Virus record (IMG/VR): IMGVR_UViG_3300047445_000186
Span: 124,001-188,000 of that record
Direction: 5' to 3' (one strand)
DNA: 64,000 nt
Shown here: one piece after another, positions 4,253 through 63,327 of the stretch
How the letters are laid out: each line of letters starts with the position of its first letter
Numbering within the stretch: the first letter of the stretch is position 1
Position numbers and translations under genes: made by a program
The notes under the pieces: model-generated
The model's input: only the letters and a program-made list of their open reading frames with translations
Databases searched by the model: none
Told to the model about the DNA's origin: nothing

Positions 4253-5359
4253 ATGACCCGAATTCTCTTCATTCTCAAAAAGCGCCCCGCTGGGCCGTAC
4301 GATTCCTGGAGCTACACCACCGACGGCCGCATGCTGCCATCTGGTCTCTCCATCTCCGCCACTCAAATGGCATACGCACTTGACGATCTCGGCATCGAGA
4401 ACAAGCTCGTGCAAGTGATCGACAACAACTGCATCGATCGCGAAGTGACGGCTTACAAGCCAACGCACGTGATCATCGAGGCATTCTGGGTTGTCCCAGA
4501 GAAGTTCGACATCCTTCGCAAGCTGCACCCAACGGTCCGCTGGATTGTTCGGAATCACTCGAAGTCCGACTTCCTTGCGCACGAAGGTGGCATGATCGGT
4601 TGGGCGGTTGATTACATCCGTAATGGCATCACGCTCGCGTGCAACTCGCCAGAAGCGACGGTTGATTTCCAGCGCGTCGCAATCGCTGCTGGTGCCGATC
4701 CGAAGTACGTGATCTACCTGCCGAACTTCTACCGTGTCGAGCCATCTGACACGGGCCTGCCTTCCATGCTCTGGAAAGCTCTGCGTTACTTCCGCATCTA
4801 TGGGAAGCCGCCTGAGCGCACTGGCGTGATGAACGTCGGTTGCTTCGGTGCCGTGCGTCCGCTGAAGAACCACATGCATCAAGCGATGGCTGCAATCATC
4901 GTGGCCGACAAGCTTGGCCTGAAGCTGAAGTTCCACATAAACGGCAATCGGATCGAAGGCAAGGCCGAGTCGATCATCTGGGCTCTGCGCGCTCTGTTCA
5001 AGCGATTCCCTCAGCACGAGCTGATCGAACTCGGCTGGCTTGCGCACAAGGAGTTCACTGAAGTCGTGCACACGATGGATGTTGTGATGCAAGTCTCGAA
5101 CAGCGAGACGTTCAACATCGTGTCCGCTGATGCGGTCGCGCATGGCGTTCCTGTTCTTGTCTCGGACGAAATCCCTTGGCTTGACGGTGAGTACCACGCG
5201 AATCCGAACGATGTGCACGACATCTCGCATCGCCTGATGAACCTGTACCTCGGTAGCGGGAACGGCATGCTCCAGTCCGATCAACGCAATCAGCTGCACA
5301 AGTATGCTGATCGTTCGACCTGGATCTGGGGTCAGTACCTTCTGGGTTCCGACGCCTGA
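4253..5359 (+). CDS. Glycosyltransferase, GT-B fold (GT4-like)
   Basis: FGAVRPLKNH and SETFNIVSADAVAHGVPVLVS motifs. Confidence 0.75.
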   Translation: MTRILFILKKRPAGPYDSWSYTTDGRMLPSGLSISATQMAYALDDLGIENKLVQVIDNNCIDREVTAYKPTHVIIEAFWVVPEKFDILRKLHPTVRWIVRNHSKSDFLAHEGGMIGWAVDYIRNGITLACNSPEATVDFQRVAIAAGADPKYVIYLPNFYRVEPSDTGLPSMLWKALRYFRIYGKPPERTGVMNVGCFGAVRPLKNHMHQAMAAIIVADKLGLKLKFHINGNRIEGKAESIIWALRALFKRFPQHELIELGWLAHKEFTEVVHTMDVVMQVSNSETFNIVSADAVAHGVPVLVSDEIPWLDGEYHANPNDVHDISHRLMNLYLGSGNGMLQSDQRNQLHKYADRSTWIWGQYLLGSDA

Positions 5360-10914: not shown

Positions 10915-11255
10915 TGTCCGCTCAGTACTACGTCTATCGAAATCTGCGAATTGAGAATACGTTCTCCGTAAGATTTCGTGGACGAGTAGTTGATCGCCTC
11001 ACTGACTTCGTCGCGCGTAATGTGCGATTCCAAGTCAGTGAGGTTGGTCGGCTTCGAGTCCTACGGGAAAGGCAGAAGAATGTTCACGCGTTCGTTCGGG
11101 CGCGAGAATACGAGCCTTTCGAATTCAATGGATCTGGAATGAAGCAGATCTCATACAACCCATACAGAGCCAGCACGTTCATGTGCGATGGGGAACCAAT
11201 CATGAAGGCAGACGTCGTTCTCTTTCGTGGAGGAAAGTGCTACCTAGTAGAATGA
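10914..11255 (+). CDS. Conserved hypothetical phage protein
   Basis: VYRNL..FSVR..GRLRVLRERQKNVHAFV..YNPY. Confidence 0.65.
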   Translation: MSAQYYVYRNLRIENTFSVRFRGRVVDRLTDFVARNVRFQVSEVGRLRVLRERQKNVHAFVRAREYEPFEFNGSGMKQISYNPYRASTFMCDGEPIMKADVVLFRGGKCYLVE

Positions 11256-12211
11256 AAAACATAATCAAGACATTTGAGCCGAACACGAAGGGGAGAGACT
11301 TCGTGATCGGTGATTTGCATGGTGCAATCTCTTGCCTGCGCAATCTAATGAAGAATCTGAACTTCGACCCTGCGGTCGATCGGATGTTTTCAGTTGGGGA
11401 CCTTGTTGATCGTGGTGAAGACAGCTTGGCCTGCCTTCGTCTCCTTCGCGAGCCGTGGTTCTGTGCTGTTCTGGCGAACCACGAGCAGATGATGTACGAG
11501 GCGTTCAACGGTGGTTGGATGGGATCGTACTGGTACCAGAACGGCGGTGGGTGGGGGTACAACTCTGCCTTGTTCGCCGATGCACTCAAGAAGCGCGATA
11601 GGGACCCCGAGTACCCCCTGCCTGCAATGACTGATGAGGACTATGAACTCATTGATCTATTGCCCCTGGTGGAGGAGATGCCATTCCTGATCACGATCAA
11701 TATGACCGATGGTCGGAAGTTCCACGTGCTTCATGCTGAGCTGCCGCCAGGTCACATTGGTCTGACGGACTCGGATCTGAGCTCGCCAGGTCGAGTGAAG
11801 GAGCTCGCAACGATTCAAGCCGGTGACGGTGACGCGTTCATGTGGAGTCGGTTCATCTTCGGCCCGTTCAACGGTGCGAATCTGATTGATCAGCGTAACA
11901 AGGTCATTCGAACTGTGCAGTTCCGATTCAAGGGTTCGACAGGTCCGTTCAATGATAAGCTCTCGCACATTATCAGCGGGCACACGATCATGCGCGCTCC
12001 GTTCACCCTGTTCGGACAGACGAACATCGACACGTGCGCGTACGCGACTGGTGACAAGGAACCGCCGAAGTACGCGGCCCTGACATGCGTGGAACTTGGA
12101 AGCTGGTCGTTCTATCAGGCAACCCCGACCACGTTCAGAACTGTGGAGCCGTTCGTCGTAAATACCGACGTAATCAATTCTCTGAAAGAACCAAATGAAG
12201 CTCCTCTCTGA
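11252..12211 (+). CDS. Metallophosphoesterase, NinI/PphA-like Ser/Thr protein phosphatase
   Basis: GDLHG, GDLVDRG, NHE, GHT motifs. Confidence 0.88.
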   Translation: MKNIIKTFEPNTKGRDFVIGDLHGAISCLRNLMKNLNFDPAVDRMFSVGDLVDRGEDSLACLRLLREPWFCAVLANHEQMMYEAFNGGWMGSYWYQNGGGWGYNSALFADALKKRDRDPEYPLPAMTDEDYELIDLLPLVEEMPFLITINMTDGRKFHVLHAELPPGHIGLTDSDLSSPGRVKELATIQAGDGDAFMWSRFIFGPFNGANLIDQRNKVIRTVQFRFKGSTGPFNDKLSHIISGHTIMRAPFTLFGQTNIDTCAYATGDKEPPKYAALTCVELGSWSFYQATPTTFRTVEPFVVNTDVINSLKEPNEAPL

Positions 12212-13397: not shown

Positions 13398-13961
13398 ATG
13401 TTGATTCACGGTAAGAACCTGTTCCCTCTGGAACGCGCCATTCACGGCATCAAGATCGGCTACTTCATGGACGCCGCTGGAAATGTGTACAGCACCAGGA
13501 CCGGGAACACGCTGAAGCAGCTCAGCGGTTCGTACACGAACAGCGGCCGATACTTCTCGCTGACGCGGGTGAACGGTTCGCGGTACAGCCCGTCGATCTC
13601 TCGCCATGCCACGCTTCTGGTCGCCGATGCAAAGGCGCACAAGGACTTCGTGAAAGAAACCTCGGTTCCCGCCTGGCCGACCGAGCCGACCGCTTCCGTT
13701 CAACCGCACAAGAAAGTCATGATCATTCCGACCGCTCGCAATCACGCCGCCAATGTGCATGCTGGTATCGCCTCCAAGGGCTGGCTGATCGGCCAAGTCG
13801 TTGGCGAAGCGATCATCTTCGGCTCGAAGCCGACGGTGCACACGACCGATGACAGCGTACTGAACGAACTCCGCCGTCTCGCTTCGAAGAAGCCTGGTAC
13901 GAAGTTCGTGAAGCTCAAGATCGAGTCGGCCCTGACCCTCGGCGCCGAAGTCTGGGAATGA
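13398..13961 (+). CDS. Hypothetical protein
   Basis: SD GGAGA; TACAAT promoter upstream. Confidence 0.65.
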   Translation: MLIHGKNLFPLERAIHGIKIGYFMDAAGNVYSTRTGNTLKQLSGSYTNSGRYFSLTRVNGSRYSPSISRHATLLVADAKAHKDFVKETSVPAWPTEPTASVQPHKKVMIIPTARNHAANVHAGIASKGWLIGQVVGEAIIFGSKPTVHTTDDSVLNELRRLASKKPGTKFVKLKIESALTLGAEVWE

Positions 13962-14235: not shown

Positions 14236-15330
14236 ATGAAAGTTTACTTAGTTGGTGGCGCAGTTCGTGATAAGTTGATGGGACTTCAGCCGAAGGACCG
14301 AGATTGGGTTGTGGTTGGCGCCACTGAAGCCGATGTTCAGAAAATGTTGGCGGATGGTTACACGCAAGTGGGGGCAGACTTTCCGGTCTTCCTCCACCCA
14401 GAGACGAATGAAGAGTACGCGCTTGCTCGCGTTGAACGCAAGAACGGCGTTGGGTACCACGGTTTCACCGTGCAAGCCGATGCATCCGTGACGATCGAAG
14501 AAGACCTGGCCAGACGCGATCTGACCGTGAACTCGATGGCCATGGACGACGATGGCAAGATCATCGATCCTTTCGGGGGTCTCCGGGATTTGCGAAATGG
14601 CGTTCTGCGGCACACGACCGAGGCATTCGCTGAAGATCCTCTTCGCGTTCTTCGCCTTGCTCGCTTCGCTGCTCGACTCCCTGCATGGCGCGTCGACGAA
14701 AGCACGAAAGCGCTCTGTTGGAAGCTCGCGTCTGAAGGTGAGCTGAATCACCTCTCGATCGAACGGATCTGGGCCGAGTTGGAGAAGGGATTCGCCGCGA
14801 AGAACCCAGGCCGCATGCTCGAAGTTCTCGAGCGGACTGGTGCTCTCCTGTTCTGCGACACTCTGTCGGCCGTGTTCGGCCCTGGTCTCGAAGACTCGGC
14901 GTTCAAGGTCTTGAACACCTTGGCTGCGGTGCCCCAGGAGAAACGATTCGCGGCCTGTGTAGGAGCTATCGCTCTTCCAGACAGTGATCTCCCGGGCGCA
15001 TCGGCACGTGTCCGTGAGTGCCTGAAGAACGTGACTGCCCTGAGGAACGCGAAGTTCACGTGCCACGATCTGGCCGAGGTCTTGAAGCGCTCTCGTGCTC
15101 TTGGCGAAGGTCCAGCGTTCAGCGACTTCTTGTCGGCAGTCGTTGCGATCGAGAGTGCTGGAACTCGACTGCCGTTCTCGATGAAGCAGCTCGCCTTGGC
15201 CGCGCACATCATGAAGGGCGTGAAAGCGATCCAGTTCCCTGGTATCGTCGGGAAAGCTCTCGGTCAGGCGATCGAGAACCAGCGAGTCCAGAACCTCCAA
15301 CAAGGCTTGAACATCCCGATCAACGTGTAA
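14236..15330 (+). CDS. cca: tRNA nucleotidyltransferase (class II CCA-adding enzyme)
   Basis: YLVGGAVRD, DRDWVVVG, EEYALAR, DLARRDLTVN, EDPLRVLRLARFAAR. Confidence 0.95.
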   Translation: MKVYLVGGAVRDKLMGLQPKDRDWVVVGATEADVQKMLADGYTQVGADFPVFLHPETNEEYALARVERKNGVGYHGFTVQADASVTIEEDLARRDLTVNSMAMDDDGKIIDPFGGLRDLRNGVLRHTTEAFAEDPLRVLRLARFAARLPAWRVDESTKALCWKLASEGELNHLSIERIWAELEKGFAAKNPGRMLEVLERTGALLFCDTLSAVFGPGLEDSAFKVLNTLAAVPQEKRFAACVGAIALPDSDLPGASARVRECLKNVTALRNAKFTCHDLAEVLKRSRALGEGPAFSDFLSAVVAIESAGTRLPFSMKQLALAAHIMKGVKAIQFPGIVGKALGQAIENQRVQNLQQGLNIPINV

Positions 15331-34221: not shown

Positions 34222-35250
34222 ATGGAACCGAAACTTCTGACACGCGATGCCTTCCGAGAAGGTGTGTTCGCACGGGACAAGCACAAGTGCGTGTTCTGCA
34301 GCGAGCCTGCTCAGGACGCGCATCACATTCTCGAGCGCCGTCTTTGGCCTGATGGCGGGTACTACCTCGAGAACGGCGCGTCTGTTTGCGGTGAGCACCA
34401 CATTCTGTGCGAGCAGACTGTCATTTCGGTCGAGCAAGTTCGCGATGCATGTGGCATTCGCCAACCGCACGTTCCTCCGCATTTCTACCCAGATCACCAG
34501 TACGACAAGTGGGGCAACCCTCTGCTCGATGGTGGCAAGCGCGGTCGTGGTGAACTGTTCTTCGACGAGTCAGTCCAGAAGGTCCTTGGCCAAGGTGGCG
34601 TGCTCGATCTGTTCACGTTGTACGCGAAGTACGGACGGACGTTCCATCTGCCATGGTCTCCTGGCATTCACGACGATGACAAGGCGCTGAAGGACTGCAC
34701 ACAGTTCGAAGGTAAGCGCGTGATCATGTCGCTGAAAGCCGATGGTGAGAACACCACTGGGTACTCGGACGGGCACATTCATGCTCGCTCGATTGACAGC
34801 CGAGGCGGTGAAGATCGCGCTTGGGTGAAGCAATTCCTGTCTGAGAACGTGTGCTACAACTTGCCTGAAGGCTGGCGAATCTGCGGTGAAAATCTGTGGG
34901 CCGAGCACTCGATCAAGTACAGCGACTTGAAATCGTACTTCTACGGCTTCAGCCTGTGGAATGAACGGAACGTCTGCCTCTCGTGGGACGAGACGATCGA
35001 GTATTTCGCTCTGTTAAACGTCACTCCAGTCGACGTGCTCTATGACGGTATCTGGGACGAGGCTGCGATCAGGAAAATCGAGAAGACGCTTGATCTTGAG
35101 AAGGTTGAAGGGTACGTGATCCGACTCGCTGAAGCGTACCCGTACAGCCAATTCAAGAGCTCGATCGCGAAGTTCGTCCGACCCGGGCACGTACAGACAT
35201 CTAAGCATTGGCGGGCAGGTAGCCGCTTCACACCGAACAAACTAGCATGA
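34222..35250 (+). CDS. HNH-like domain fused to ATP-dependent RNA ligase
   Basis: N-term CVFC..DAHH..C..HH; C-term KADGEN (motif I), ICGEN, EGYVIR, AKFVR. Confidence 0.85.
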   Translation: MEPKLLTRDAFREGVFARDKHKCVFCSEPAQDAHHILERRLWPDGGYYLENGASVCGEHHILCEQTVISVEQVRDACGIRQPHVPPHFYPDHQYDKWGNPLLDGGKRGRGELFFDESVQKVLGQGGVLDLFTLYAKYGRTFHLPWSPGIHDDDKALKDCTQFEGKRVIMSLKADGENTTGYSDGHIHARSIDSRGGEDRAWVKQFLSENVCYNLPEGWRICGENLWAEHSIKYSDLKSYFYGFSLWNERNVCLSWDETIEYFALLNVTPVDVLYDGIWDEAAIRKIEKTLDLEKVEGYVIRLAEAYPYSQFKSSIAKFVRPGHVQTSKHWRAGSRFTPNKLA

Positions 35251-43506: not shown

Positions 43507-43566
43507 GCGAACCGAAAAGCAAACCAAACCTGGGGAACTACGAAAGTGGTTCCCCAGGGTCGTTTC
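43474..43566 (+). promoter_or_regulatory. Putative attenuator: antiterminator (CCCCAGGT/ACCTGGGG) competing with terminator hairpin 43529-43558
   Basis: CCTGGGGAACTAC-GAAA-GTGGTTCCCCAGG; its 5' arm is also complementary to 43474-43481. Confidence 0.7.
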
Positions 43567-43798: not shown

Positions 43799-43874
43799 GG
43801 GTCGTTGACAGAGCGGCAGATGTACCTCCCTCTTAAGGAGATCTAGCAGGGTTCGACTCCCTGGCGACCCACCA
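43799..43874 (+). tRNA. tRNA-Lys(CTT)
   Basis: Cloverleaf, loop CTCTTAA, CCA end. Confidence 0.85.
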
Positions 43875-43879
43875 AACAT

Positions 43880-43990
43880 GCCGAGATAGCACGATGGTCG
43901 TGCACTTTATGTAAGAGCGAGTGTCTACGGGAAACACGGCACTTGACAGAAAAGAAACGGATGGTGGTTCAAATCCATCTCTTGGCGCCA
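43880..43990 (+). ncRNA. tRNA-like RNA with extended anticodon arm and no anticodon loop
   Basis: Acceptor GCCGAGA/TCTTGGC-GCCA, D arm, TTCAAAT T-loop; ~50-nt irregular hairpin in place of anticodon arm. Confidence 0.7.
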
Positions 43991-43996
43991 AACAAT

Positions 43997-44072
43997 GGGA
44001 CTTTCGTATAGCTGGTGCGTACGGGAGCTTGAAAACCTTCAGGAAGCGGTTCGATTCCGCTAGGTCCCACCA
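43997..44072 (+). tRNA. tRNA-Phe(GAA)
   Basis: Loop TTGAAAA, CCA. Confidence 0.85.
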
Positions 44073-44076
44073 ATTT

Positions 44077-44151
44077 GCTTCGTTCGACTACCGGTTAGGT
44101 CGCTAGCCTTTCAAGCTGGAGAAACGGGTTCGACTCCCGTACGAAGCACCA
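44077..44151 (+). tRNA. tRNA-Glu(TTC)
   Basis: Loop CTTTCAA, CCA. Confidence 0.9.
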
Positions 44152-44158
44152 GAACAAT

Positions 44159-44237
44159 AGGGTTGAAATCGAAGTGGCACGAGATACATGGCTTTGACCC
44201 ATGGTAATATCAGGTTCGAGTCCTGACAGCCCTGCCA
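44159..44237 (+). tRNA. tRNA-Gln(TTG)
   Basis: CATGG-CTTTGAC-CCATG, CCA. Confidence 0.88.
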
Positions 44238-44242
44238 AACAT

Positions 44243-44320
44243 ATCAGCGTCGTCTAAATGGTCTAGGACATCAGACTTTCAATCTGAGCAATGCGGGTTC
44301 AACTCCCGTCGCTGATGCCA
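44243..44320 (+). tRNA. tRNA-Glu(TTC)
   Basis: TCAGA-CTTTCAA-TCTGA, CCA. Confidence 0.9.
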
Positions 44321-44326
44321 AACAAT

Positions 44327-44401
44327 ACCTTAGTAGCTCAGTGGTAGAGCACCGTCTTGATAAGGCGTAGGTCGTTGGTTCGATTCCAACTTAAGGTACC
44401 A
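44327..44401 (+). tRNA. tRNA-Ile(GAT)
   Basis: Loop TTGATAA, CCA. Confidence 0.88.
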
Positions 44402-44408
44402 GAATAAT

Positions 44409-44482
44409 GGGACGTTCGTATATGGGTATTATGTGGCGCTGTCTACGCTACGAAACGGGTTCGAGTCCCGTACGTCCCGCCA
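44409..44482 (+). tRNA. tRNA-Asp(GTC)
   Basis: TGGCG-CTGTCTA-CGCTA, CCA. Confidence 0.88.
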
Positions 44483-44486
44483 AATT

Positions 44487-44561
44487 CGTGCGGTAGCATT
44501 ATGGTAATGCGCCACCCTCATAAGGTGTCCCAAGTGGGTTCGATTCCCACCTGCACGACCA
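44487..44561 (+). tRNA. tRNA-Met(CAT), elongator-type or Ile2
   Basis: Loop CTCATAA; C1-G72 paired so not initiator-like; CCA. Confidence 0.8.
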
Positions 44562-44573
44562 AGTGTCCTTTGC

Positions 44574-44645
44574 TCCGGTGTAGCTCAGCGGTAGAGCAGC
44601 TCGCTGTTAACGAGTTGGTCGTTGGTTCGATCCCAGCCTCCGGAG
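44574..44645 (+). tRNA. tRNA-Asn(GTT), no encoded CCA
   Basis: Loop CTGTTAA; ends G-CAA. Confidence 0.85.
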
Positions 44646-44661
44646 CAAAGAACATTTCTAT

Positions 44662-44756
44662 TCCCCTGTACTCTAATTGGTAAGAGACCTGGCTGTTAAC
44701 CAGACGTAAAGGCCGTAAGGCGTAATATGCAAGTTCGAAGCTTGCTGGGGGAGCCA
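44662..44756 (+). tRNA. tRNA-Asn(GTT) with long variable arm
   Basis: Loop CTGTTAA; ~25-nt variable region with GCC-GTAA-GGC hairpin; CCA. Confidence 0.78.
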
Positions 44757-44806
44757 AGATTAAGAAACCTTACTCACGCGGTCACTCGCGGTCCCGTAGG
44801 GTTTAT

Positions 44807-44882
44807 GCGCGGTTAGCTCAGTTGGTAGAGCAAACGACCGATAATCGTTAGGTCGCTGGTTCGAATCCAGCACTGCGCACCA
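44807..44882 (+). tRNA. tRNA-Ile(GAT), C at position 33
   Basis: AACGA-CCGATAA-TCGTT, CCA. Confidence 0.88.
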
Positions 44883-44890
44883 CAAATTAT

Positions 44891-44967
44891 GCCTCTTTAG
44901 CTCAACTGGATAGAGCACTGGCCTACGAAGCCGGGGGTTGCAGGTTCGAATCCTGTGAGAGGCACCA
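44891..44967 (+). tRNA. tRNA-Arg(ACG)
   Basis: Loop CTACGAA, CCA. Confidence 0.92.
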
Positions 44968-44973
44968 GAATAT

Positions 44974-45034
44974 TCCGACCGTCAGTGCAAGGTTATCCTT
45001 CTACGATTCCCCCTTGCGCGATCTCTTTGTCGGA
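44974..45034 (+). ncRNA. Y-RNA-like ncRNA inside tRNA array
   Basis: TCCGAC/GTCGGA stem, CCG-N9-GGTTATC, GTGCAAGG/CCTTGCGC stem, 3' ATCTCTTTGT shared with 54929-54985. Confidence 0.7.
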
Positions 45035-45042
45035 CGAAACAT

Positions 45043-45116
45043 AGGTCCTTGGTGTAATGGCAGCATGACGGTCTCCAAAACCGTTCGTGGGGGTTCGAGT
45101 CCCTCAGGACCTGCCA
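45043..45116 (+). tRNA. tRNA-Trp(CCA)
   Basis: ACGGT-CTCCAAA-ACCGT, CCA. Confidence 0.92.
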
Positions 45117-45185
45117 AGATAACGGTGCGTTTAGGAACGGACGCTTAATTGCCAACCCCACATAATCTGGCGGCCGAATAACAAT

Positions 45186-45260
45186 GTGCACTTGACAGAA
45201 TGGTAATGTCGCTGGCTGCAACCCAGTTGTTCGGGGGTTCGATTCCCTCAGTGCACTCCA
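45186..45260 (+). tRNA. tRNA-Cys(GCA)
   Basis: Loop CTGCAAC, U73, CCA. Confidence 0.88.
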
Positions 45261-45416
45261 ATTACGACAGGAGCAAGGCGCCCTCGGGCTTGTGGCTAGC
45301 TGTGGAAAGTGACCCTCCACCTCCAACGTCGTTCCAATCAAAGCTTCGTCGTTCCATTCACACGGGTACGCGACTCCGTTTCTCGCAAGAGGTGCAGGGC
45401 GAAGCAACGCAATTAT

Positions 45417-45489
45417 AGGTGAGCCAGCGGCGCTGGACAAGAGCATCCAAAGCTCGAAGTTGGTAGTTCGACTCTGCCATCGCCTGCCA
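45417..45489 (+). tRNA. Atypical tRNA-Trp(CCA), minimal D arm
   Basis: D arm CCAGC-GGC-GCTGG; loop ATCCAAA; TTCGACT; CCA. Confidence 0.7.
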
Positions 45490-45494
45490 ATTAT

Positions 45495-45566
45495 AGGTGA
45501 TCCATGGGCCGTGGACATGAGCCTCCAAAACTCGTTGGGACAGTTCGACTCTGTCATTGCCTGCCA
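45495..45566 (+). tRNA. Atypical tRNA-Trp(CCA), minimal D arm
   Basis: D arm CCATG-GGC-CGTGG; loop CTCCAAA; CCA. Confidence 0.7.
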
Positions 45567-45574
45567 AAATTTAT

Positions 45575-45650
45575 GGTGTACGTAGTGTAGTGGTCTGCAC
45601 CCTAGGCTGTGAACCTGGTAGTGGGAGTTCGATCCTCCTCGTACACCCCA
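45575..45650 (+). tRNA. tRNA-His(GTG)
   Basis: G-1/C73, loop CTGTGAA, CCA. Confidence 0.9.
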
Positions 45651-45658
45651 GAATATGT

Positions 45659-45731
45659 TGCCTCGTGATATGGAAATCGCCCCTGGCTCTGACCCAGGTG
45701 GATGACGGTTCGATTCCGTCCGGGGTTGCCA
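45659..45731 (+). tRNA. tRNA-Gln(CTG), short D arm
   Basis: CCTGG-CTCTGAC-CCAGG, CCA. Confidence 0.8.
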
Positions 45732-45736
45732 AATAC

Positions 45737-45812
45737 GCCTTGTGAGTGAATGTGGAGAGCACAGCGGTTTCGTATTCCGCAGGACGCAGTTCGACTCTGC
45801 GACAAGGCACCA
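45737..45812 (+). tRNA. tRNA-Thr(CGT)
   Basis: GCGGT-TTCGTAT-TCCGC; GCC acceptor start, A73, CCA. Confidence 0.78.
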
Positions 45813-45819
45813 GAATTAT

Positions 45820-45892
45820 TGGGGTATGACATGGACGTTGGCCTGGGCTTTGACCCCGGTGCCGGTCGGTTCGATTCCGACTACCCTTGCCA
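45820..45892 (+). tRNA. tRNA-Gln(TTG), short D arm
   Basis: CTGGG-CTTTGAC-CCCGG, CCA. Confidence 0.78.
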
Positions 45893-45895
45893 AAC

Positions 45896-45973
45896 ACCGC
45901 ATTAGCTCAACTGGATCAGAGCGTCGCACTCCGAAGGCGACAGATGTGGGTTCGAATCCCATGTGTGGTACCA
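45896..45973 (+). tRNA. tRNA-Arg(CCG)
   Basis: Loop CTCCGAA, CCA. Confidence 0.85.
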
Positions 45974-45980
45974 AAATTAC

Positions 45981-46056
45981 GCCGTCATAGCTCAGTTGGT
46001 AGAGCAGTTCCTTGGTATGGAGAAGGTCAGGGGTTCGATTCCTCTTGACGGCACCA
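45981..46056 (+). tRNA. tRNA-Thr(GGT)
   Basis: Loop TTGGTAT, CCA. Confidence 0.9.
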
Positions 46057-46248
46057 GTTTAGCACATGCTCGGCATGATAACACAGGGTCATTGATCCGG
46101 ACATGTTCGATCTGCGGTCTGACGTAGGAGTACGGCAAAGACAAGCTCGGAACGGGAACTCCCATGTGCTGATTCATTACTTGAAAGGAGCGCGTAATGC
46201 GTACGTCAGTTTCGACGCCTAGCGCGTCTGGTAAACGCCATACACTTT

Positions 46249-46324
46249 GGGTGTATGGCGTAAAGGTTAGCGCATCGGGCTTTTAACCCGTAAGGTCAGA
46301 GTTCGACTCTCTGTGCACCCACCA
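46249..46324 (+). tRNA. tRNA-Lys(TTT)
   Basis: CGGG-CTTTTAA-CCCG, CCA. Confidence 0.9.
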
Positions 46325-52043: not shown

Positions 52044-52493
52044 ATGGACACACAAGAAGAACAGTACGAAAAGGCCGCGCGAGCTGGGCTGATTCCGTAC
52101 ATCCGAGACGACGCAGGCACACCGCACTATCTGATGATGGTTGCATCGAATCCGGTGTATGGTGGCCCGCGACCGATGATCAGCAAGGGCAAAATCGAAG
52201 ACGGCGAGAACACTTTCGAGTGCGCAGTTCGTGAAGCCGAAGAAGAGCTTGGGCTTGTTCAGCAGAATATGCAGAGCACCCCGTTCCTCTTGGCCGATGA
52301 GCACGTCACGCTTCGATCGGGTGCGTATCAGTTGACCGTTTACGCCGTTCAGATCTATGATCGGTGGAACTTCGACAAATGGTGCGATGAGACCGAGTAC
52401 ACGGCATGGTTCTCGCTGGAGGAATTCCGTGAAAAGGGACGTAGAGACCACATCCAGTATGTGGAGAGACTTGAAGCGATTTTGAGATCGTAG
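52044..52493 (+). CDS. NUDIX hydrolase
   Basis: KGKIEDGENTFECAVREAEEELG. Confidence 0.9.
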   Translation: MDTQEEQYEKAARAGLIPYIRDDAGTPHYLMMVASNPVYGGPRPMISKGKIEDGENTFECAVREAEEELGLVQQNMQSTPFLLADEHVTLRSGAYQLTVYAVQIYDRWNFDKWCDETEYTAWFSLEEFREKGRRDHIQYVERLEAILRS

Positions 52494-52521
52494 AAAGAGA
52501 AAGTAGTTCAGGAGAATAAAA

Positions 52522-53118
52522 ATGGCTGGCCATAGAATTTTGAAGTTGGATGTTCAGGGTACCCCTGACAAGTGGATTGATTACGAACAAGCGATTACGT
52601 ACCATGCCAAGGGCCTGGTGGCGTGGCAGCTCGGCGATGAAAATCACACACGCTTCCGTGGCGGTGAAAACCGAATCACAGGCCAGATTTCGCAAATCTC
52701 CTCAGCTCCAATCATTGCTGTGCGCGGCGAAGGCGCTGGAAAGCGCGCGAATCGCGTCCCAACTCTGACGAACCCAGAGCTGTTCGCCCGTGATCGTCAC
52801 ACTTGCGCGTACTGCGGACGCACGTTCTCTGAACATCGTCTGACTCGTGACCACATCATCCCGGTCTCCCGCGGTGGTAAGGACATCTGGACGAACGTCG
52901 TGACTGCTTGCGATTACGACAATCACAAGAAGGACGATCACTTGCTGCAGGAAATCGGCATGGAATTGCTGTACGTTCCGTACACGCCGAATCGCGCTGA
53001 GTCGCTGATCTTGAAGGGTCGTAAGATCCTCCCTGTTCAGGCCGAGTACTTGGCACAGTTCATTCCAGAATCGAGCCGAGCGCATTCGATCCTGAACGAG
53101 TTGATGAACGTTCACTAA
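52522..53118 (+). CDS. HNH endonuclease (McrA-like)
   Basis: RDRHTCAYCG..TRDHIIPVSRGG..WTNVVTAC..NHKK. Confidence 0.9.
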   Translation: MAGHRILKLDVQGTPDKWIDYEQAITYHAKGLVAWQLGDENHTRFRGGENRITGQISQISSAPIIAVRGEGAGKRANRVPTLTNPELFARDRHTCAYCGRTFSEHRLTRDHIIPVSRGGKDIWTNVVTACDYDNHKKDDHLLQEIGMELLYVPYTPNRAESLILKGRKILPVQAEYLAQFIPESSRAHSILNELMNVH

Positions 53119-54921: not shown

Positions 54922-54998
54922 GCTGCTTTCGAACCGAAGATAATGGGTTATCGGCTAAGTTTCCCACTATCATCTCTTTGTTCGAGCATTTTAGCAGC
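54922..54998 (+). ncRNA. Y-RNA-like ncRNA 1 upstream of Ro60
   Basis: TCGAAC-C-GAA / TTTGTTCGA bulged-C helix; GATAATGGG/CCCACTATC; CCG-N9-GGTTATC. Confidence 0.78.
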
Positions 54999-55024
54999 CT
55001 CTTCAACACTTACTTCAATCTCAT

Positions 55025-55172
55025 TCAGCCGCAGCAAGTTGGTTATCAACTACTACGACCTGGACCGTCCGCCCTGTAGAAACACTAAACTCTCTACTGG
55101 GTAACCCGTTGACTCCTCTGGTTATTGGAGCGCCTCGCCGAGAGGGCAGACTTTTGTCTGAAGATCGGCTGA
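55025..55172 (+). ncRNA. Y-RNA-like ncRNA 2 with large multi-helix domain
   Basis: TCAGCCG/CGGCTGA closing stem; CCG-N9-GGTTATC; internal hairpins. Confidence 0.6.
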
Positions 55173-55358
55173 TGTTGCAAGTACAAGGAACTTGATCGGA
55201 TACCGCAACTTAAATCGCGGTGTAGGCGGAGCCCATGCTCGAAAGAGATACTCTGCTGAAGTCTCCAACAGCAATTTTTGCTGGATGGGATTGTAGTAAG
55301 TGCTGTCACGCGCCTTTGTTCACTGCGCTAAAGTGAACCGATAATCAGGAGAGAACTC

Positions 55359-56978
55359 ATGAACATGTACACCGACCACGCCGCTTCTCTGAACGCCGTT
55401 CAGACTTCCACCCCACAGACGGAAGCAATTCCTGGCCGCGAAGCCGAGATGAAGCTGAACAACGCTGGTGGATTCACGTTCACTCTTGATCAGTGGGGCG
55501 TCCTCGATCGCTTCATCATGATCGGTTCCGAGAACGGGAACTACTACGTCGGTCAAAAGGACGTGATGAAGCAATCGTTCGCGAACACCCTGAAGTGTAT
55601 CGCTGAAGACGGTCTGCGTGCTGTCGCTCGTGCTCTCGAGTACTCAACCTCTGGTCGCGCTCCGAAGAACGACCCTGCTCTGGTTGTGCTCGCGCTCGCC
55701 GCATCGAAGGGAACGCCTGAAGTTCAATCCGCTGCTTACGACGCCCTGCCAAAGGTCGCTCGTACCGGTACCCATCTGTTCACGTTCGTCTCGATTCTGA
55801 ACTCCCTCGGGAAGTGGAACGCCGCTGCAAAGCGCGGCCTGGCGAAGTGGTACACGAACCGTTCGATCGACAAGCTCGCGATCCAAGTGCTGAAGTACCA
55901 GCAGCGCAATGGCTGGTCGCACCGCGACGTCCTGCGTCTGGCACACGTGAAGCCGCAGAACGACATCCAGACGAATCTGTTCAAGTACATCACGAAGGGT
56001 GGCGACGCTCTCGTGCAAGGCTCGCCGATTCCGCAGCTCGTGATCGACTTCGAATTCCTGAAGCGCGCCGAGTCGGCCAAGGATGTCGTTCGTCTGATCG
56101 AGTCGAATCCATCGATCGCATGGGAACTCGTTCCTACGCAATTCCTGAAGGATCCGGACGTGCTGATGGCGCTCCTCCCTTCGATGGGCATGACCGCTGT
56201 GATCCGTCAACTGGGTAAGCTCACTGCCGCTGGCGTGATCAAGCCGATGTCGGAAGGCGAGAAGTTGGTCGTCGCGAAGCTCTCGGATGCCGAAGCAATC
56301 AAGCGTGGCCGTGTCCATCCGATCACTATCCTCCAAGCCCTGAAGCAGTACCAAGCTGGTCATGGTGAAAAGGGTTCGTTGGTCTGGTCTCCAGTTCAAC
56401 GCGTCGTGTCGGCCCTGGATGACTCGTTCTACTCTGCGTTCACGCTTGGCGAGGACAAGAAGGAGAATCACTTCATCGCTTGCGACATCTCCGGCTCCAT
56501 GACCATGGACAGCGCGAAGGTGATCGGTTCGCCGAACCTCTTGGCTGGTGAAGTGGCTGCGGTGTTCGCGATGGCGATCGCTCGTACCCAATCGAACTAT
56601 TTCCTCGCTGGTTTCAAGCAGAACTTGGAACCACTGAAGATCTCGCCGACGATGCGTCTCGCTGACGCGTTGAACGCAATGCGTGCTATGCACTGGCAAG
56701 GCGGCTCGACCGACTGTGCTAAGGCATTCGAGTACGCGCTCCAGAACGGTATCGCGGTGGACAAGTTCACCGTGATTACCGACAATGAAACGTACGCGGG
56801 TGGCCAAGCCCCAGTGCAGGCGCTCAAGAAGTATCGTGACCGTACTGGTCGCGCTGCGAAGTCGATCGTGATTGCTACCTCGGTATCTGAATTCACGATC
56901 GCCGATCCGAAGGACGGTGGTATGTTGGACATCGCAGGGTTTGACTCGGCTGCTCCACAGATCATCGCTGATTTCTAA
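55359..56978 (+). CDS. rsr: Ro60/TROVE-domain RNA-binding protein with C-terminal vWA
   Basis: NNAGGF..LDRF..GSE.G.YY; KYQQRNGWSHRDVLRLAH; DISGSM; ITDNET; GFD. Confidence 0.95.
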   Translation: MNMYTDHAASLNAVQTSTPQTEAIPGREAEMKLNNAGGFTFTLDQWGVLDRFIMIGSENGNYYVGQKDVMKQSFANTLKCIAEDGLRAVARALEYSTSGRAPKNDPALVVLALAASKGTPEVQSAAYDALPKVARTGTHLFTFVSILNSLGKWNAAAKRGLAKWYTNRSIDKLAIQVLKYQQRNGWSHRDVLRLAHVKPQNDIQTNLFKYITKGGDALVQGSPIPQLVIDFEFLKRAESAKDVVRLIESNPSIAWELVPTQFLKDPDVLMALLPSMGMTAVIRQLGKLTAAGVIKPMSEGEKLVVAKLSDAEAIKRGRVHPITILQALKQYQAGHGEKGSLVWSPVQRVVSALDDSFYSAFTLGEDKKENHFIACDISGSMTMDSAKVIGSPNLLAGEVAAVFAMAIARTQSNYFLAGFKQNLEPLKISPTMRLADALNAMRAMHWQGGSTDCAKAFEYALQNGIAVDKFTVITDNETYAGGQAPVQALKKYRDRTGRAAKSIVIATSVSEFTIADPKDGGMLDIAGFDSAAPQIIADF

Positions 56979-61368: not shown

Positions 61369-63327
61369 ATGTCAGCTCTCAAGTCTCTCTCGGCGAAATA
61401 CGCAGAGAAATTCGCAGCACCGGAAGTCATGTCGCTCGAAGCGTACCTGGACCTGTGCAAAACCGAACCTCTGGCATATGCCACCGCCGCAGAGCGGATG
61501 GTCGCAGCCATTGGCCAACCTGTTGTGGTTGACACGTCGGAAGACCCACGTCTCTCGCGCATCCACAGCAACAAGAAGATCCGCACGTACGATGCATTCA
61601 AGGAATACTACGGCGGTGAAGATCAGATCGAACGTCTCGTTGCGTACTTCCGCAATGCAGCCGCAGGTCTGGAAGAATCGAAGCAGATTCTGTACCTGAA
61701 GGGTCCAGTCGGCGGCGGGAAGTCCAGCCTGGTCGAGCTCCTGAAGGCTCTGATGGAAAAGCACCCGTTCTACGCTCTGTACGATGCGAGCGAAAAGGAT
61801 GCGGAACTGCGGACCTCGCCAGTGTTCGAATCGCCGCTCGGTCTGTTCAACAAGCACGACCCCGATCACCAAGCGGTTCTCGCTGACTCGGGCATCCCAG
61901 TGGGCTACGCTGGTCAAGCAGTTCTGTCGGGCTGGGCACTGAAGAAGCTCGAAGAATTCGGCGGCGACATCACGCGTTTCAGCGTCGTGAAGCTCTGGCC
62001 GAACAAGGACACGCAAGTCGGCGTGATGAAGGTCGAGCCGGGCGACGAGAACAACCAAGACGTCTCTGTGCTGGTCGGCAAGACTGATCTGCGGAAGCTC
62101 GAGAAGTTCAGCCAGAATCACCCGTACGCTTACACATACGGTGGTGGTCTGAATCGCACGAACCAAGGCCTGATGGACTTCGCCGAAATGTTCAAGGCGA
62201 ACATCAAGACGCTGAACCCGTTGCTGATGGCTACGCAAGAGCACAACTACAACGGTACCGAAGCGATCCCAGCGATGCCTTACACCGGCATTATCTGCGC
62301 GCACAGCAACGAGTCCGAGTGGTTCGCGTTCAAGAACAACAAGACGAACGAAGCGTTCCTTGACCGTGTGTACATCGTGGACGTGCCGTACTGCCTCCGC
62401 GTCGACGAAGAAGTGAAGATCTATCAGAAGCTGATCGCGGGCTCCTCGCTCTCGAAGGCACCGATGGCTCCGTACACTCTCGAGCTGCTCGCTCAGTGGA
62501 TGGTTCTGACTCGCCTGAAGGAGCCAGAGAACTCGACGCTGATGGCGAAGATGAAGGTCTATAACGGCGAGAACGTGAAGGACACGATGCCGAACGCAAA
62601 GCCGTACGAAGAGTACCGCGATGCTGCCGGGAACGACGAAGGTATGAGCGGCCAAAGCACTCGATTCGCGTTCAAGATCCTGTCGCAATCGTTCGATCTG
62701 CGCCCTGAAGAACAACAGGCAAACCCTGTGGATCTGATGTACGTGATCGACGCCGCGGTCAAGAAGGAATCGCTGCCGGAAGAAACCGAGAAGAAGCTCC
62801 TGACGCTGATCAAGGATCTGCAACGGAAGTACTTCGATTTCCTCGAAAAGGAACTGCGCGCTGCCTACCTCGACTCGTTCAACAGCTTCGGCCAGAACAT
62901 GTTCGATCGGTACTTCCTGTTCGCTGAAGCCTGGATTGCTGATGAGCAATGCCGCGATCCGGAAACTCATCAGATGATGAACCGCGAGAAGCTGAACGCA
63001 GCTCTCGAAGAGACCGAAAAGCCGGCTGGGATCGTGAATGCCAAGGACTTCCGGAACGAGATCGTGAACTACGTGCTGCGGTACAAGAACAAGCACGACG
63101 TCGCTCCTCGCTGGAACGAGTACGAGAAGATCAAGGTCGTGCTCGAGAAGCGGATGTTCAGCGCAACCGAGAACATCATGCCAGTCGTGTCGTTCGGTCC
63201 GAAGGGTGACAAGGAAGCTGAAGAGAAGCACACGAAGTTCGTCGAGCGCATGATCGAGAACGGGTACAGCGAAAACCAAGTGAAGATCCTGGTGTCCTGG
63301 TGGTCGCAAAACAAGAAAGCTGCATAA
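61369..63327 (+). CDS. prkA: PrkA/YeaG family serine kinase (AAA+)
   Basis: AAERM..AIG; GPVGGGKSS; EPGDENNQD; EMFKA; AHSNESEW. Confidence 0.95.
   Translation: MSALKSLSAKYAEKFAAPEVMSLEAYLDLCKTEPLAYATAAERMVAAIGQPVVVDTSEDPRLSRIHSNKKIRTYDAFKEYYGGEDQIERLVAYFRNAAAGLEESKQILYLKGPVGGGKSSLVELLKALMEKHPFYALYDASEKDAELRTSPVFESPLGLFNKHDPDHQAVLADSGIPVGYAGQAVLSGWALKKLEEFGGDITRFSVVKLWPNKDTQVGVMKVEPGDENNQDVSVLVGKTDLRKLEKFSQNHPYAYTYGGGLNRTNQGLMDFAEMFKANIKTLNPLLMATQEHNYNGTEAIPAMPYTGIICAHSNESEWFAFKNNKTNEAFLDRVYIVDVPYCLRVDEEVKIYQKLIAGSSLSKAPMAPYTLELLAQWMVLTRLKEPENSTLMAKMKVYNGENVKDTMPNAKPYEEYRDAAGNDEGMSGQSTRFAFKILSQSFDLRPEEQQANPVDLMYVIDAAVKKESLPEETEKKLLTLIKDLQRKYFDFLEKELRAAYLDSFNSFGQNMFDRYFLFAEAWIADEQCRDPETHQMMNREKLNAALEETEKPAGIVNAKDFRNEIVNYVLRYKNKHDVAPRWNEYEKIKVVLEKRMFSATENIMPVVSFGPKGDKEAEEKHTKFVERMIENGYSENQVKILVSWWSQNKKAA

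What the first reader, a model, noticed from the sequence alone, without database searches (positions are those of the whole stretch)
44974..45034. A third Y-like RNA between tRNA-Arg and tRNA-Trp, 10 kb from Ro60
Seen: a 61-nt spacer folds as UCCGAC/GUCGGA plus GUGCAAGG/CCUUGCGC with a pyrimidine-rich loop. It shares CCG-N9-GGUUAUC and the 3' AUCUCUUUGU with the Ro-adjacent RNA, while the paired stems differ compensatorily. Inference: it is co-transcribed with the tRNA array and released by tRNA processing. That would place a Ro60 ligand under the putative tRNA-damage attenuator and link Ro60 activity to tRNA stress.
Basis: partly seen in the sequence, partly recalled or inferred. Interest (0 to 1): 0.8.

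Follow-up and report, generated by a model that had tools for sequence, protein, structure and literature searches.

The report
Y RNA inside a phage tRNA array
A 61-base hairpin sitting in a tRNA-sized slot of a giant phage's tRNA gene array belongs to the small RNA family that partners the RNA-quality-control protein Ro60, which suggests that such RNAs can be made as by-products of tRNA processing.

Summary
Window 44974-45034 (+) lies in the 75-nt spacer between tRNA-Arg(ACG) and tRNA-Trp. It folds as a 6-bp lower stem, a bulged C, an 8-bp (up to 11-bp) upper stem and a pyrimidine-rich loop that starts with UUAUC.

A covariance model built only from 20 Ro60-adjacent short hairpins, without this element, finds it at 31.7 bits (E 3e-5). 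The next unrelated hit in the 64-kb window scores 13 bits. So it is a short hairpin Y RNA (YrlB/Yrn2 class), not a YrlA.

Its closest relative (77% identity, with compensatory stem changes) lies between two tRNAs in a phage whose Ro60 is only 62% identical. At least 15 family members in at least 11 independent loci sit 1-11 nt from a tRNA. These include a cultured Streptomyces phage and a Gemmataceae MAG. Five tRNA-array loci (~87 tRNAs) with no Ro60 gene in them gave no hit.

Release by tRNA processing is therefore well supported by comparison, but it has not been shown: no RNA data exist. The proposed tie to a "tRNA-damage attenuator" has no evidence. The second Ro-adjacent RNA is about 264 nt long, not 26.

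This is a known RNA kind in a new genomic and biogenesis context.

The parts
44974..45034 (+). Element A: a 61-nt short hairpin Y RNA in a tRNA-array slot
   Evidence: Fold with z = -3.4. R1 model match at 44973-45035, 31.7 bits, E 3e-5.
44974..44979 (+). 5' arm of the lower stem (UCCGAC). It pairs with 45029-45034 (GUCGGA).
   Evidence: The lower stem covaries across the family, with 6 of 7 pairs changed on both sides.
44979..44981 (+). CCG: the last stem C, the bulged C (44980) and a G. This is the near-invariant core matching the Ro-binding bulged helix of Y RNAs.
   Evidence: C7 and G9 are invariant and C8 is at least 90% conserved in alignment A3. The motif resembles GGUCCGA / GNCGAA of Chen 2014.
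44985..44992 (+). 5' arm of the upper stem (GUGCAAGG). It pairs with 45012-45019 (CCUUGCGC).
   Evidence: There are compensatory differences from L123a and from B.
44991..44997 (+). GGUUAUC motif at the top of the upper stem and the start of the loop
   Evidence: GUUAUC is invariant in all 20 Ro60-adjacent family members and the preceding G is at least 90% conserved.
45020..45028 (+). 3' internal-loop strand GAUCUCUUU. It ends in the conserved UUUG junction with the lower stem.
44891..44967 (+). tRNA-Arg(ACG), CCA encoded, 6 nt upstream of A. Its 3' processing would set the 5' end of A.
45043..45116 (+). tRNA-Trp(CCA), 8 nt downstream of A. RNase P cleavage at its 5' end would set the 3' end of A.
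54928..54986 (+). Element B: the Ro60-adjacent short hairpin Y RNA, a paralogue of A
   Evidence: R1 gives 55.5 bits. Rfam sbRNA RF01656 gives 30.4 bits, E 2.6e-4, below its gathering score of 38.
55023..55286 (+). Element C: a long (~264 nt) Y-type RNA with the same CCG..GGUUAUC 5' module and a UUUUUG-stem 3' end around a ~200-nt insert
   Evidence: A conserved family in 6 other loci.
55359..56978 (+). Ro60 orthologue (539 aa)
   Evidence: Pfam TROVE 6e-27 and vWA_Ro60 4e-47. PDB 2NVO 1e-98 and 1YVP 3e-95.

Best explanation
Element A is a genuine short hairpin Y RNA. It is a paralogue of the hairpin next to the phage's Ro60 gene, but it is encoded as one 'slot' of the tRNA array.

Inferred mechanism. 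The array is transcribed as a polycistron. 3' maturation of the upstream tRNA-Arg and RNase P cleavage at the 5' end of the downstream tRNA-Trp free a hairpin of about 61-75 nt. Its closed 5'/3' stem, with the bulged C and following G, is bound by the phage Ro60. The pyrimidine-rich UUAUC loop stays exposed. The RNA then acts like other small Y RNAs: it gates or regulates Ro60, or tethers it to a partner such as host PNPase. Its supply would be tied to expression of the tRNA array rather than to the Ro60 operon.

Shown: the sequence and structure, family membership, covariation, the recurring position flush against tRNAs, and absence from tRNA arrays in loci without Ro60.

Inferred: transcription, the processing enzymes, Ro60 binding and the downstream role.
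For: 1. Fold: -19.8 kcal/mol, z = -3.4.

2. Family structure. The family of 20 Ro60-adjacent hairpins is 88% paired, and 15 of 18 pairs change on both sides. No shuffle of 500 reaches this, and slid controls give 36-49% paired.

3. Independent match. Model R1, built without A, finds A at 31.7 bits, E 3e-5. The next unrelated hit in 128 kb scores 13 bits.

4. Strand. Of 121 R1 hits listed in searches of Ro60 loci (53, 49, 15 and 4), every one lies on the Ro60 strand.

5. Older than this phage. A is 77% identical to L123:2781-2842, which lies 4 nt from tRNA-Ile and 4 nt from tRNA-Glu in a phage whose Ro60 is 62% identical. A is only 65% identical to B in its own genome. The differences in the stems are compensatory, including paired insertions and deletions.

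6. L123 keeps the long Y RNA beside Ro60 but has both of its short hairpins in the tRNA array.

7. Other copies flush against tRNAs. L123b, L177 and L170. L208, three in L275 that alternate with tRNAs, L276, L274 and L257. Streptomyces phage Blueeyedbeauty, 4 nt before tRNA-Ile. Gemmataceae MAG L290, arranged Y-tRNAPro-Y.

8. Spacing. A has 6 and 8 nt of spacer on its two sides. The short tRNA-tRNA spacers in the same array are 4-15 nt.

9. Controls. No hit at E<=1 in 871 kb of 100 unrelated viral loci that all carry GGTTATC..ATCTCTTTGT. No hit in 94.6 kb holding about 87 tRNAs, in loci that carry no Ro60 gene.

10. Precedent from the literature. M. smegmatis YrlA is cut by RNase P and receives CCA, and YrlA and YrlB come from one precursor (PMC4201824). 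Phage Yrl RNAs bind phage Ro60 and form a complex with PNPase (PMC12135203).
Against: There are no expression data. No RNA run was listed, and the one run labelled RNA showed only tRNA cross-matches.

A scores lowest among the clear family members. After CCG it reads GUC where many members read GAA (the GNCGAA motif of Chen 2014). In the model's register, two pairs at the base of the upper stem are not standard pairs.

A has no Rfam match: neither Y_RNA, nor sbRNA, nor YrlA.

It lies 10.4 kb from Ro60, beyond the 4-kb rule used to define bacterial Y RNAs.

The promoter and terminator scan is a sigma-70 consensus scan and says little for a jumbo phage.

The control without Ro60 covers five loci, of which only XacN1 is a complete genome.
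Confidence: 0.65

Rival explanations
1. A cis-acting Ro60 landing pad. The hairpin is not released as a stable RNA. It recruits Ro60, and through it an exonuclease, to the polycistronic pre-tRNA, so that quality control or processing of the flanking phage tRNAs happens on the precursor.
For: It has the same Ro-binding module. It always lies flush against tRNAs. Ro60 is known to handle misfolded structured RNAs (PMC12135203 introduction). The phage carries tRNA repair enzymes.
Against: Identical modules next to Ro60 with no tRNAs nearby (B and most family members) are free-standing. The closed 5'/3' stem is typical of released Y RNAs. RNase P cleavage 8 nt downstream would free it in any case.
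Confidence: 0.12
2. A generic spacer hairpin of the tRNA array, such as a processing or folding insulator or an RNase III or RNase E site, with no relation to Ro60. The likeness to B would be coincidence or a recent copy.
For: tRNA arrays do contain structured spacers. A has no Rfam hit.
Against: E is 3e-5 with a model that never saw A. The CCG and GGUUAUC cores are kept. The array-type copy is kept in a phage whose Ro60 is 62% identical. No hits in tRNA arrays of loci without Ro60. All hits lie on the Ro60 strand.
Confidence: 0.05
3. A decaying duplicate of B with no function, carried along in the array.
For: It has the lowest score among clear family members. It reads GUC rather than GAA after CCG. 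Two pairs are non-standard in the model's register.
Against: A is closer to L123a (77%) than to B (65%), so the array copy predates the split of the two phages. Both stems are kept by compensatory changes and paired insertions and deletions. In L123 the array copies are the only short hairpins in the 21.6-kb locus held.
Confidence: 0.06
4. One reading: A is controlled by a tRNA-damage-sensing attenuator upstream of the array, so that Ro60 activity reports tRNA stress.
For: Context only. A 13-bp hairpin at 43529-43558 lies upstream of the first tRNA. RNA ligase, a CCA-adding-type enzyme and a phosphoesterase are encoded in the window.
Against: That hairpin has no proper U-tract and no Rfam match. 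Nothing links it to tRNA damage. Relatives place the Y hairpin between different tRNAs and at different distances from Ro60.
Confidence: 0.05

Closest known systems
Short hairpin bacterial Y RNAs (S. Typhimurium YrlB, M. smegmatis YrlB, D. radiodurans Yrn2; Chen et al. 2014, PMC4201824)
   Same: About 60-100 nt. The 5' and 3' ends pair into a stem that carries the Ro-binding bulged-C motif. [quoted passage not shown] It is encoded on the Ro60 strand, and there are several Y RNAs per genome.
   Different: A lies 10.4 kb from Ro60, inside a tRNA array and flush against tRNAs on both sides. It reads CCGUC rather than CGAA. Binding has not been tested.
Phage Y RNA-like RNAs next to phage Ro60 (22 phages in Chen 2014; Yrl1 and Yrl2 of Thermus phage phiLo, PMC12135203)
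   Same: Phage-encoded. A stem-bulge-stem design. Partners of a phage Ro60, and they form complexes with host PNPase in vitro.
   Different: Those lie directly upstream of Ro60. Earlier surveys discarded candidates that overlapped tandem tRNAs or lay more than 4 kb from Ro60, so array-embedded copies were not reported.
YrlA (Rfam RF02553)
   Same: The Ro-binding stem module, and an evolutionary and enzymatic tie to tRNA. M. smegmatis YrlA is cut by RNase P and receives CCA.
   Different: YrlA carries the tRNA-like domain inside the RNA. A has none. It sits between real tRNAs instead, and RF02553 gives only chance-level hits on the tRNAs.
Metazoan Y RNAs and nematode sbRNAs (RF00019, RF01656)
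   Same: A lower stem, a bulged C followed by G, an upper stem ending in GGUUAUC, a pyrimidine-rich loop and a 3' ..CUUUG junction. Element B reaches 30.4 bits on the sbRNA model.
   Different: Those are Pol III transcripts with their own genes and a 3' oligo-U. A itself gets no Rfam hit.
tRNA-punctuated release of non-tRNA RNAs (mitochondrial tRNA punctuation; MHV68 tRNA-miRNA TMERs; MALAT1 mascRNA). From my own knowledge, not tested here.
   Same: Flanking tRNA or tRNA-like structures recruit RNase P or RNase Z, and the cuts define the ends of a neighbouring functional RNA.
   Different: Different RNAs and hosts. For Y RNAs this route has not been described in the papers I could search.

Membership tests
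   UCCGAC/GUCGGA, C44980, G44981. C7 and G9 are invariant and C8 at least 90% conserved in A3.
   GUGCAAGG-UUAUC...CCUUGCGC-GAUCUCUUUG.
   31.7 bits, E 3e-5, with filters off over the 64-kb window. The next unrelated hit scores 13 bits.
   Ro60 is at 55359-56978 on the + strand. All 121 listed family hits in searches of Ro60 loci are on the Ro60 strand.
Bacterial Y RNA as defined operationally by Chen et al. 2014 | Encoded within about 2-4 kb of Ro60 | tested here: not met
   A lies 10.3-10.4 kb upstream. This is a search criterion, not a functional one.
Bacterial Y RNA as defined operationally by Chen et al. 2014 | A GNCGAAN0-1G motif near the 5' end | tested here: not met
   A reads GACCGUCAG. 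CCG is kept and GAA is replaced by GUC. Several Ro60-adjacent family members also lack GAA, so in this clade only CCG is fixed.
Y RNA in the functional sense | Bound and stabilised by Ro60 | not testable with these tools
   This needs RIP, a gel-shift assay or a Northern blot. No RNA run was listed.
YrlA (Rfam RF02553) | An internal tRNA-like domain (D, T and acceptor-like arms) | tested here: not met
   No RF02553 match on A. Only hits of 19-24 bits, at chance level, across real tRNAs, against a gathering score of 69. The hairpin has no room for such a domain.
Metazoan Y RNA / sbRNA (RF00019, RF01656) | A match to the Rfam model | tested here: not met
   A has no hit at E<=10 in an 86-nt search. 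B reaches 30.4 bits on RF01656, below its gathering score of 38.

The most novel reading that the evidence does not exclude
tRNA-punctuated biogenesis may be a general and overlooked route for making Y RNAs. On this reading, phage and some bacterial tRNA arrays double as expression platforms for Y RNAs. RNase P and tRNA 3' processing cut the hairpins out, so the supply of Ro60-Y RNP is tied in amount and timing to tRNA supply. Short Y hairpins would move between the Ro60-proximal site and distal tRNA arrays. Earlier surveys would have missed this because they discarded candidates near tandem tRNAs or more than 4 kb from Ro60. It would also give a concrete genomic setting for the long-suspected common history of Y RNAs and tRNAs.
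Probability: 0.4. Interest if true: 0.75.

Novelty: new variant of a known kind. Interest (0 to 1): 0.6.

Why it matters
Y RNAs are the obligate partners of Ro60, from bacteria to humans. How bacterial and phage Y RNAs are made and regulated is barely known, and candidates have been sought only within a few kb of Ro60.

If Y hairpins are encoded as slots in tRNA arrays and cut out by the tRNA-processing machinery, three things follow:
- The catalogue of Y RNAs is incomplete.
- Y RNA dosage is tied to tRNA expression. This points to a role for phage Ro60 in looking after the phage's own tRNA pool during infection.
- The tRNA-Y RNA relationship, so far seen as mimicry inside YrlA, gains a second, genomic form.

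The arrangement also occurs in a cultured, easily handled system, Streptomyces phage Blueeyedbeauty on S. griseus, so it can be tested directly.

Tried and rejected
- Rfam at gathering threshold and at E<=10. A gets no family, only a chance mir-2774 hit at 12.8 bits. YrlA hits are chance matches across real tRNAs.
- Exact-pattern scan of IMG/VR for GGTTATC..ATCTCTTTGT. It gave 116 or more hits, about the number I estimate from chance (my own rough arithmetic). Only the three copies from this same phage had the stem.
- A tighter pattern scan found only this phage's own contigs and the L123 contig.
- Megablast of the array against GenBank phages gave only tRNA matches. There is no close cultured relative.
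- Using the dienelactone hydrolase next to the array to fetch relatives returned only this phage's own contigs.
- Public reads. No RNA run was listed. The DNA runs are rhizosphere metagenomes, probably the source. The one run labelled RNA, which the tool marks as probably DNA, gave only tRNA cross-matches, so there is no information on ends or expression.
- Sigma-70 promoter and terminator scan. Nothing on the + strand inside the array, but this has little weight for a jumbo phage.
- Considered and rejected: a pseudo-tRNA (no ARAGORN or Rfam tRNA signal), an intrinsic terminator (no U-tract after the stem), and coding sequence (the only ORF is a 191-aa antisense ORF that runs across tRNA-Trp and tRNA-Cys).
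- The two review papers on bacterial Y RNAs (PMC10870794, PMC6047535) are not held, so I could not check whether they mention tRNA-linked Y RNAs.

Full report
**What is at the coordinates.** ARAGORN and Rfam place 19-20 tRNA genes at 43799-46324, all on the + strand. tRNA-Arg(ACG) ends at 44967 with an encoded CCA, and tRNA-Trp starts at 45043. The 75-nt spacer between them contains the 61-nt hairpin 44974-45034. RNAfold gives these parts:
- a lower stem UCCGAC/GUCGGA;
- an unpaired C at 44980;
- GUC/GAU, then a bulged A;
- an upper stem GUGCAAGG/CCUUGCGC;
- a 19-nt loop that begins UUAUC and has 15 pyrimidines;
- an unpaired CUCUUU on the 3' side.

The energy is -19.8 kcal/mol with z = -3.4, and 1 of 200 shuffles folds as well.

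**The Ro60 locus.** ORF 55359-56978 is a full-length Ro60. It matches Pfam TROVE and vWA_Ro60, D. radiodurans Rsr 2NVO at E 1e-98 and Xenopus Ro60 1YVP at 3e-95.

Upstream lies a 59-nt hairpin, B, at 54928-54986. It reaches 30.4 bits (E 2.6e-4 in 500 nt) on the nematode stem-bulge RNA model RF01656, whose members are Y RNA homologues. That is below the gathering score of 38. A and B share CCG-N9-GGUUAUC and AUCUCUUUGU, while the paired letters differ.

C closes with AUUCAGC / GCUGGAU and has the same CCG..GGUUAUC module. It is conserved in six other loci.

**A family, and an independent test.** The Ro60 protein recovered 62 IMG/VR loci, mostly contigs of 100-430 kb, that is, jumbo phages. The window is identical to a 331,776-bp IMG/VR contig, and the public runs that hold it are rhizosphere metagenomes.

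The DNA upstream of Ro60 in these loci repeatedly carries ...CCG-N9-GGTTATC.... Many of these sites close into 54-72 nt hairpins. I aligned 20 Ro60-adjacent hairpins, leaving out A and the array copies (A3). On the common structure:
- 88% of cells are paired;
- 15 of 18 pairs change on both sides;
- no shuffle of 500 reaches this;
- versions with the partner slid give 36-49% paired.

Model R1, built from this alignment, was run with filters off over both strands of the window. It finds B at 55.5 bits and A (44973-45035) at 31.7 bits, E 3e-5. The next unrelated hit scores 13 bits, E 0.84. A is thus a family member by a test that never saw it.

A is not a YrlA. It has no tRNA-like domain, and RF02553 gives only chance-level hits across real tRNAs. 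It also has no Rfam hit of its own. After CCG it reads GUC where many members read GAA, but several Ro60-adjacent members also lack GAA. In this clade the fixed core is CCG plus GGUUAUC: C7, G9 and GUUAUC are invariant, and C8 and the leading G are at least 90% conserved.

**The array position recurs.**
- In L123, a phage whose Ro60 is 62% identical, R1 finds two hairpins and both are in the tRNA array. One is at 2781-2842 (48.8 bits), 4 nt after tRNA-Ile and 4 nt before tRNA-Glu. The other is at 4528-4589 (31.4 bits), 7 nt after tRNA-Cys and about 7 nt before a tRNA-like gene with an insert.
- L123 keeps a long C-type RNA next to Ro60 but has no short hairpin there.
- A is 77% identical to L123a but only 65% identical to B in its own genome. 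The stems differ by compensatory substitutions and paired insertions and deletions. The array-type copy is therefore older than the split of the two phages and has been kept.
- Further copies 1-11 nt from a tRNA: L177 and L170; L208 (-8.5 kb from Ro60), L276, L274, L257, and L275, where three hairpins alternate with tRNA-Gly, tRNA-Pro and tRNA-Met just upstream of Ro60.
- In the cultured Streptomyces phage Blueeyedbeauty, a 33.5-bit hit ends 4 nt before tRNA-Ile, and Ro60 lies inside a dispersed tRNA array.
- A Gemmataceae MAG has the arrangement Y-tRNAPro-Y-Ro60.
- An alignment dominated by these tRNA-flush copies shows 91% pairing, with 17 of 18 pairs changed on both sides. It was fitted to the model, so it leans towards the structure.
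- Every R1 hit listed in the searches of Ro60 loci (53, 49, 15 and 4) lies on the Ro60 strand.

**Controls.** R1 gives no hit at E<=1 in 871 kb from 100 unrelated viral loci that all contain GGTTATC..ATCTCTTTGT. With filters off it gives no hit (best 10.6 bits) in 94.6 kb holding about 87 tRNA genes, from loci that carry no Ro60 gene. These include Xanthomonas jumbo phage XacN1, which did not appear among the Ro60 matches in the phage collection.

**How it most likely works.** In the window's array, the short tRNA-tRNA spacers are 4-15 nt. A has 6 nt before it and 8 nt after it, so it occupies a tRNA-sized slot. No sigma-70-like promoter or terminator-like site lies on the + strand inside the array, though this is weak evidence for a jumbo phage.

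The most economical reading has three steps:
1. The array is transcribed as a polycistron.
2. tRNA 3' maturation upstream and RNase P cleavage downstream release the hairpin.
3. The phage Ro60 binds its bulged-C stem.

Established knowledge supports this reading. RNase P and RNase E process polycistronic tRNA transcripts (my own knowledge; I saw only the abstract of PMC2190699). M. smegmatis YrlA is cut by RNase P and receives CCA, and YrlA and YrlB come from one precursor (PMC4201824). Thermus phage Yrl RNAs bind phage Ro60 and form complexes with host PNPase (PMC12135203).

What the RNP then does is inference. It could gate Ro60, tether it to PNPase or another partner, or take part in quality control of the phage's tRNA pool. 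The window also encodes an RNA ligase, a CCA-adding-type nucleotidyltransferase and a phosphoesterase, which fits a theme of tRNA maintenance but proves nothing. I found no evidence for the 'tRNA-damage attenuator'.

**Rivals.**
- A cis-acting Ro60 landing pad on the pre-tRNA, never released. I cannot exclude this.
- A generic spacer hairpin. The model score, the conserved cores and the controls speak against it.
- A decaying duplicate. Its retention across phages with compensatory change speaks against it.

**Novelty.** Y RNAs next to Ro60 in bacteria and phages are known (PMC4201824; PMC12135203). I found no paper that describes Y RNAs inside tRNA arrays. The 2014 survey explicitly discarded hits that overlapped tandem tRNAs or lay more than 4 kb from Ro60. 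Two reviews were not available to me. I therefore rate this as a known RNA kind in a new genomic and biogenesis context.

**Limits.** There are no expression or binding data. The E-values come from a shortened calibration and are rough. The Ro60-less control is small. The strand bias, covariation and spacing are comparative evidence, not proof of processing.

Noticed in passing
window 55023-55286 (+): A long (~264 nt) Y-type RNA between hairpin B and Ro60. It has the same CCG..GGUUAUC 5' module and closes with UUUUUG plus a stem around a ~200-nt insert. It is conserved in L117, L121, L125, L137, L148 and L160, and as a GGUUAAC variant in L123:9671-9925. It has no Rfam or YrlA match.
   Followed up: partly
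window 44160-44232 and 45822-45886 (+): Two tRNA-like pieces in array spacers that ARAGORN did not call. One is an Rfam tRNA hit at 28.7 bits, just under the gathering score of 29. The other carries a T-arm and gives a weak tRNA-Sec hit of 20.8 bits.
   Followed up: no
window 44662-44756 (+); L123:2943-3030, 3131-3220, ~4597-4700: Over-long tRNAs. The window has a 95-nt tRNA-Asn and L123 has 88-90 nt tRNAs. L123 also has an uncalled tRNA with a ~30-nt insert in the anticodon region. These may be intron-like inserts in phage tRNAs.
   Followed up: no
window 45261-45575 and 46057-46248 (+): Two long spacers (315 and 192 nt) inside the tRNA array with no tRNA, no Rfam hit and no R1 hit. Their content is unexplained.
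   Followed up: no
window 43529-43558 (+): A 13-bp hairpin with a GAAA tetraloop, 240 nt upstream of the first tRNA, without a proper U-tract. No evidence on its function.
   Followed up: no
window 14236-15330, 34222-35250, 11183-12211 (+): A possible tRNA or RNA repair kit in the same window: a PolyA_pol/CCA-adding-type nucleotidyltransferase, an RNA ligase (PF09414) and a metallophosphoesterase.
   Followed up: partly
window 52044-53118 and 61369-63327 (+): NUDIX and HNH genes upstream of Ro60 and a PrkA-type kinase downstream keep the same neighbourhood with Ro60 in 23-35 related loci.
   Followed up: partly
L275:4343-4950: An alternating array directly upstream of Ro60: Y hairpin, tRNA-Gly, Y hairpin, tRNA-Pro, Y hairpin, tRNA-Met, then a Y RNA with a T-arm (YrlA-like). 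The gaps are 2-7 nt.
   Followed up: partly
L118/L199:859-941: A Y-type RNA (CCG-N9-GGTTATC with a closing stem) that contains a T-arm-like hairpin. It lies 6 nt after tRNA-Thr(CGT) and 9.1 kb upstream of Ro60. It was found by motif search and is not an R1 hit.
   Followed up: no
L195 (Streptomyces phage Blueeyedbeauty NC_048720, 53056-84648): Ro60 lies in the middle of a dispersed array of about 25 tRNAs plus a tmRNA, with RNA ligase and polynucleotide kinase genes a few kb downstream. A second, weak Y-like hit (13864-13925, 17.7 bits) lies 27 nt before tRNA-His.
   Followed up: partly
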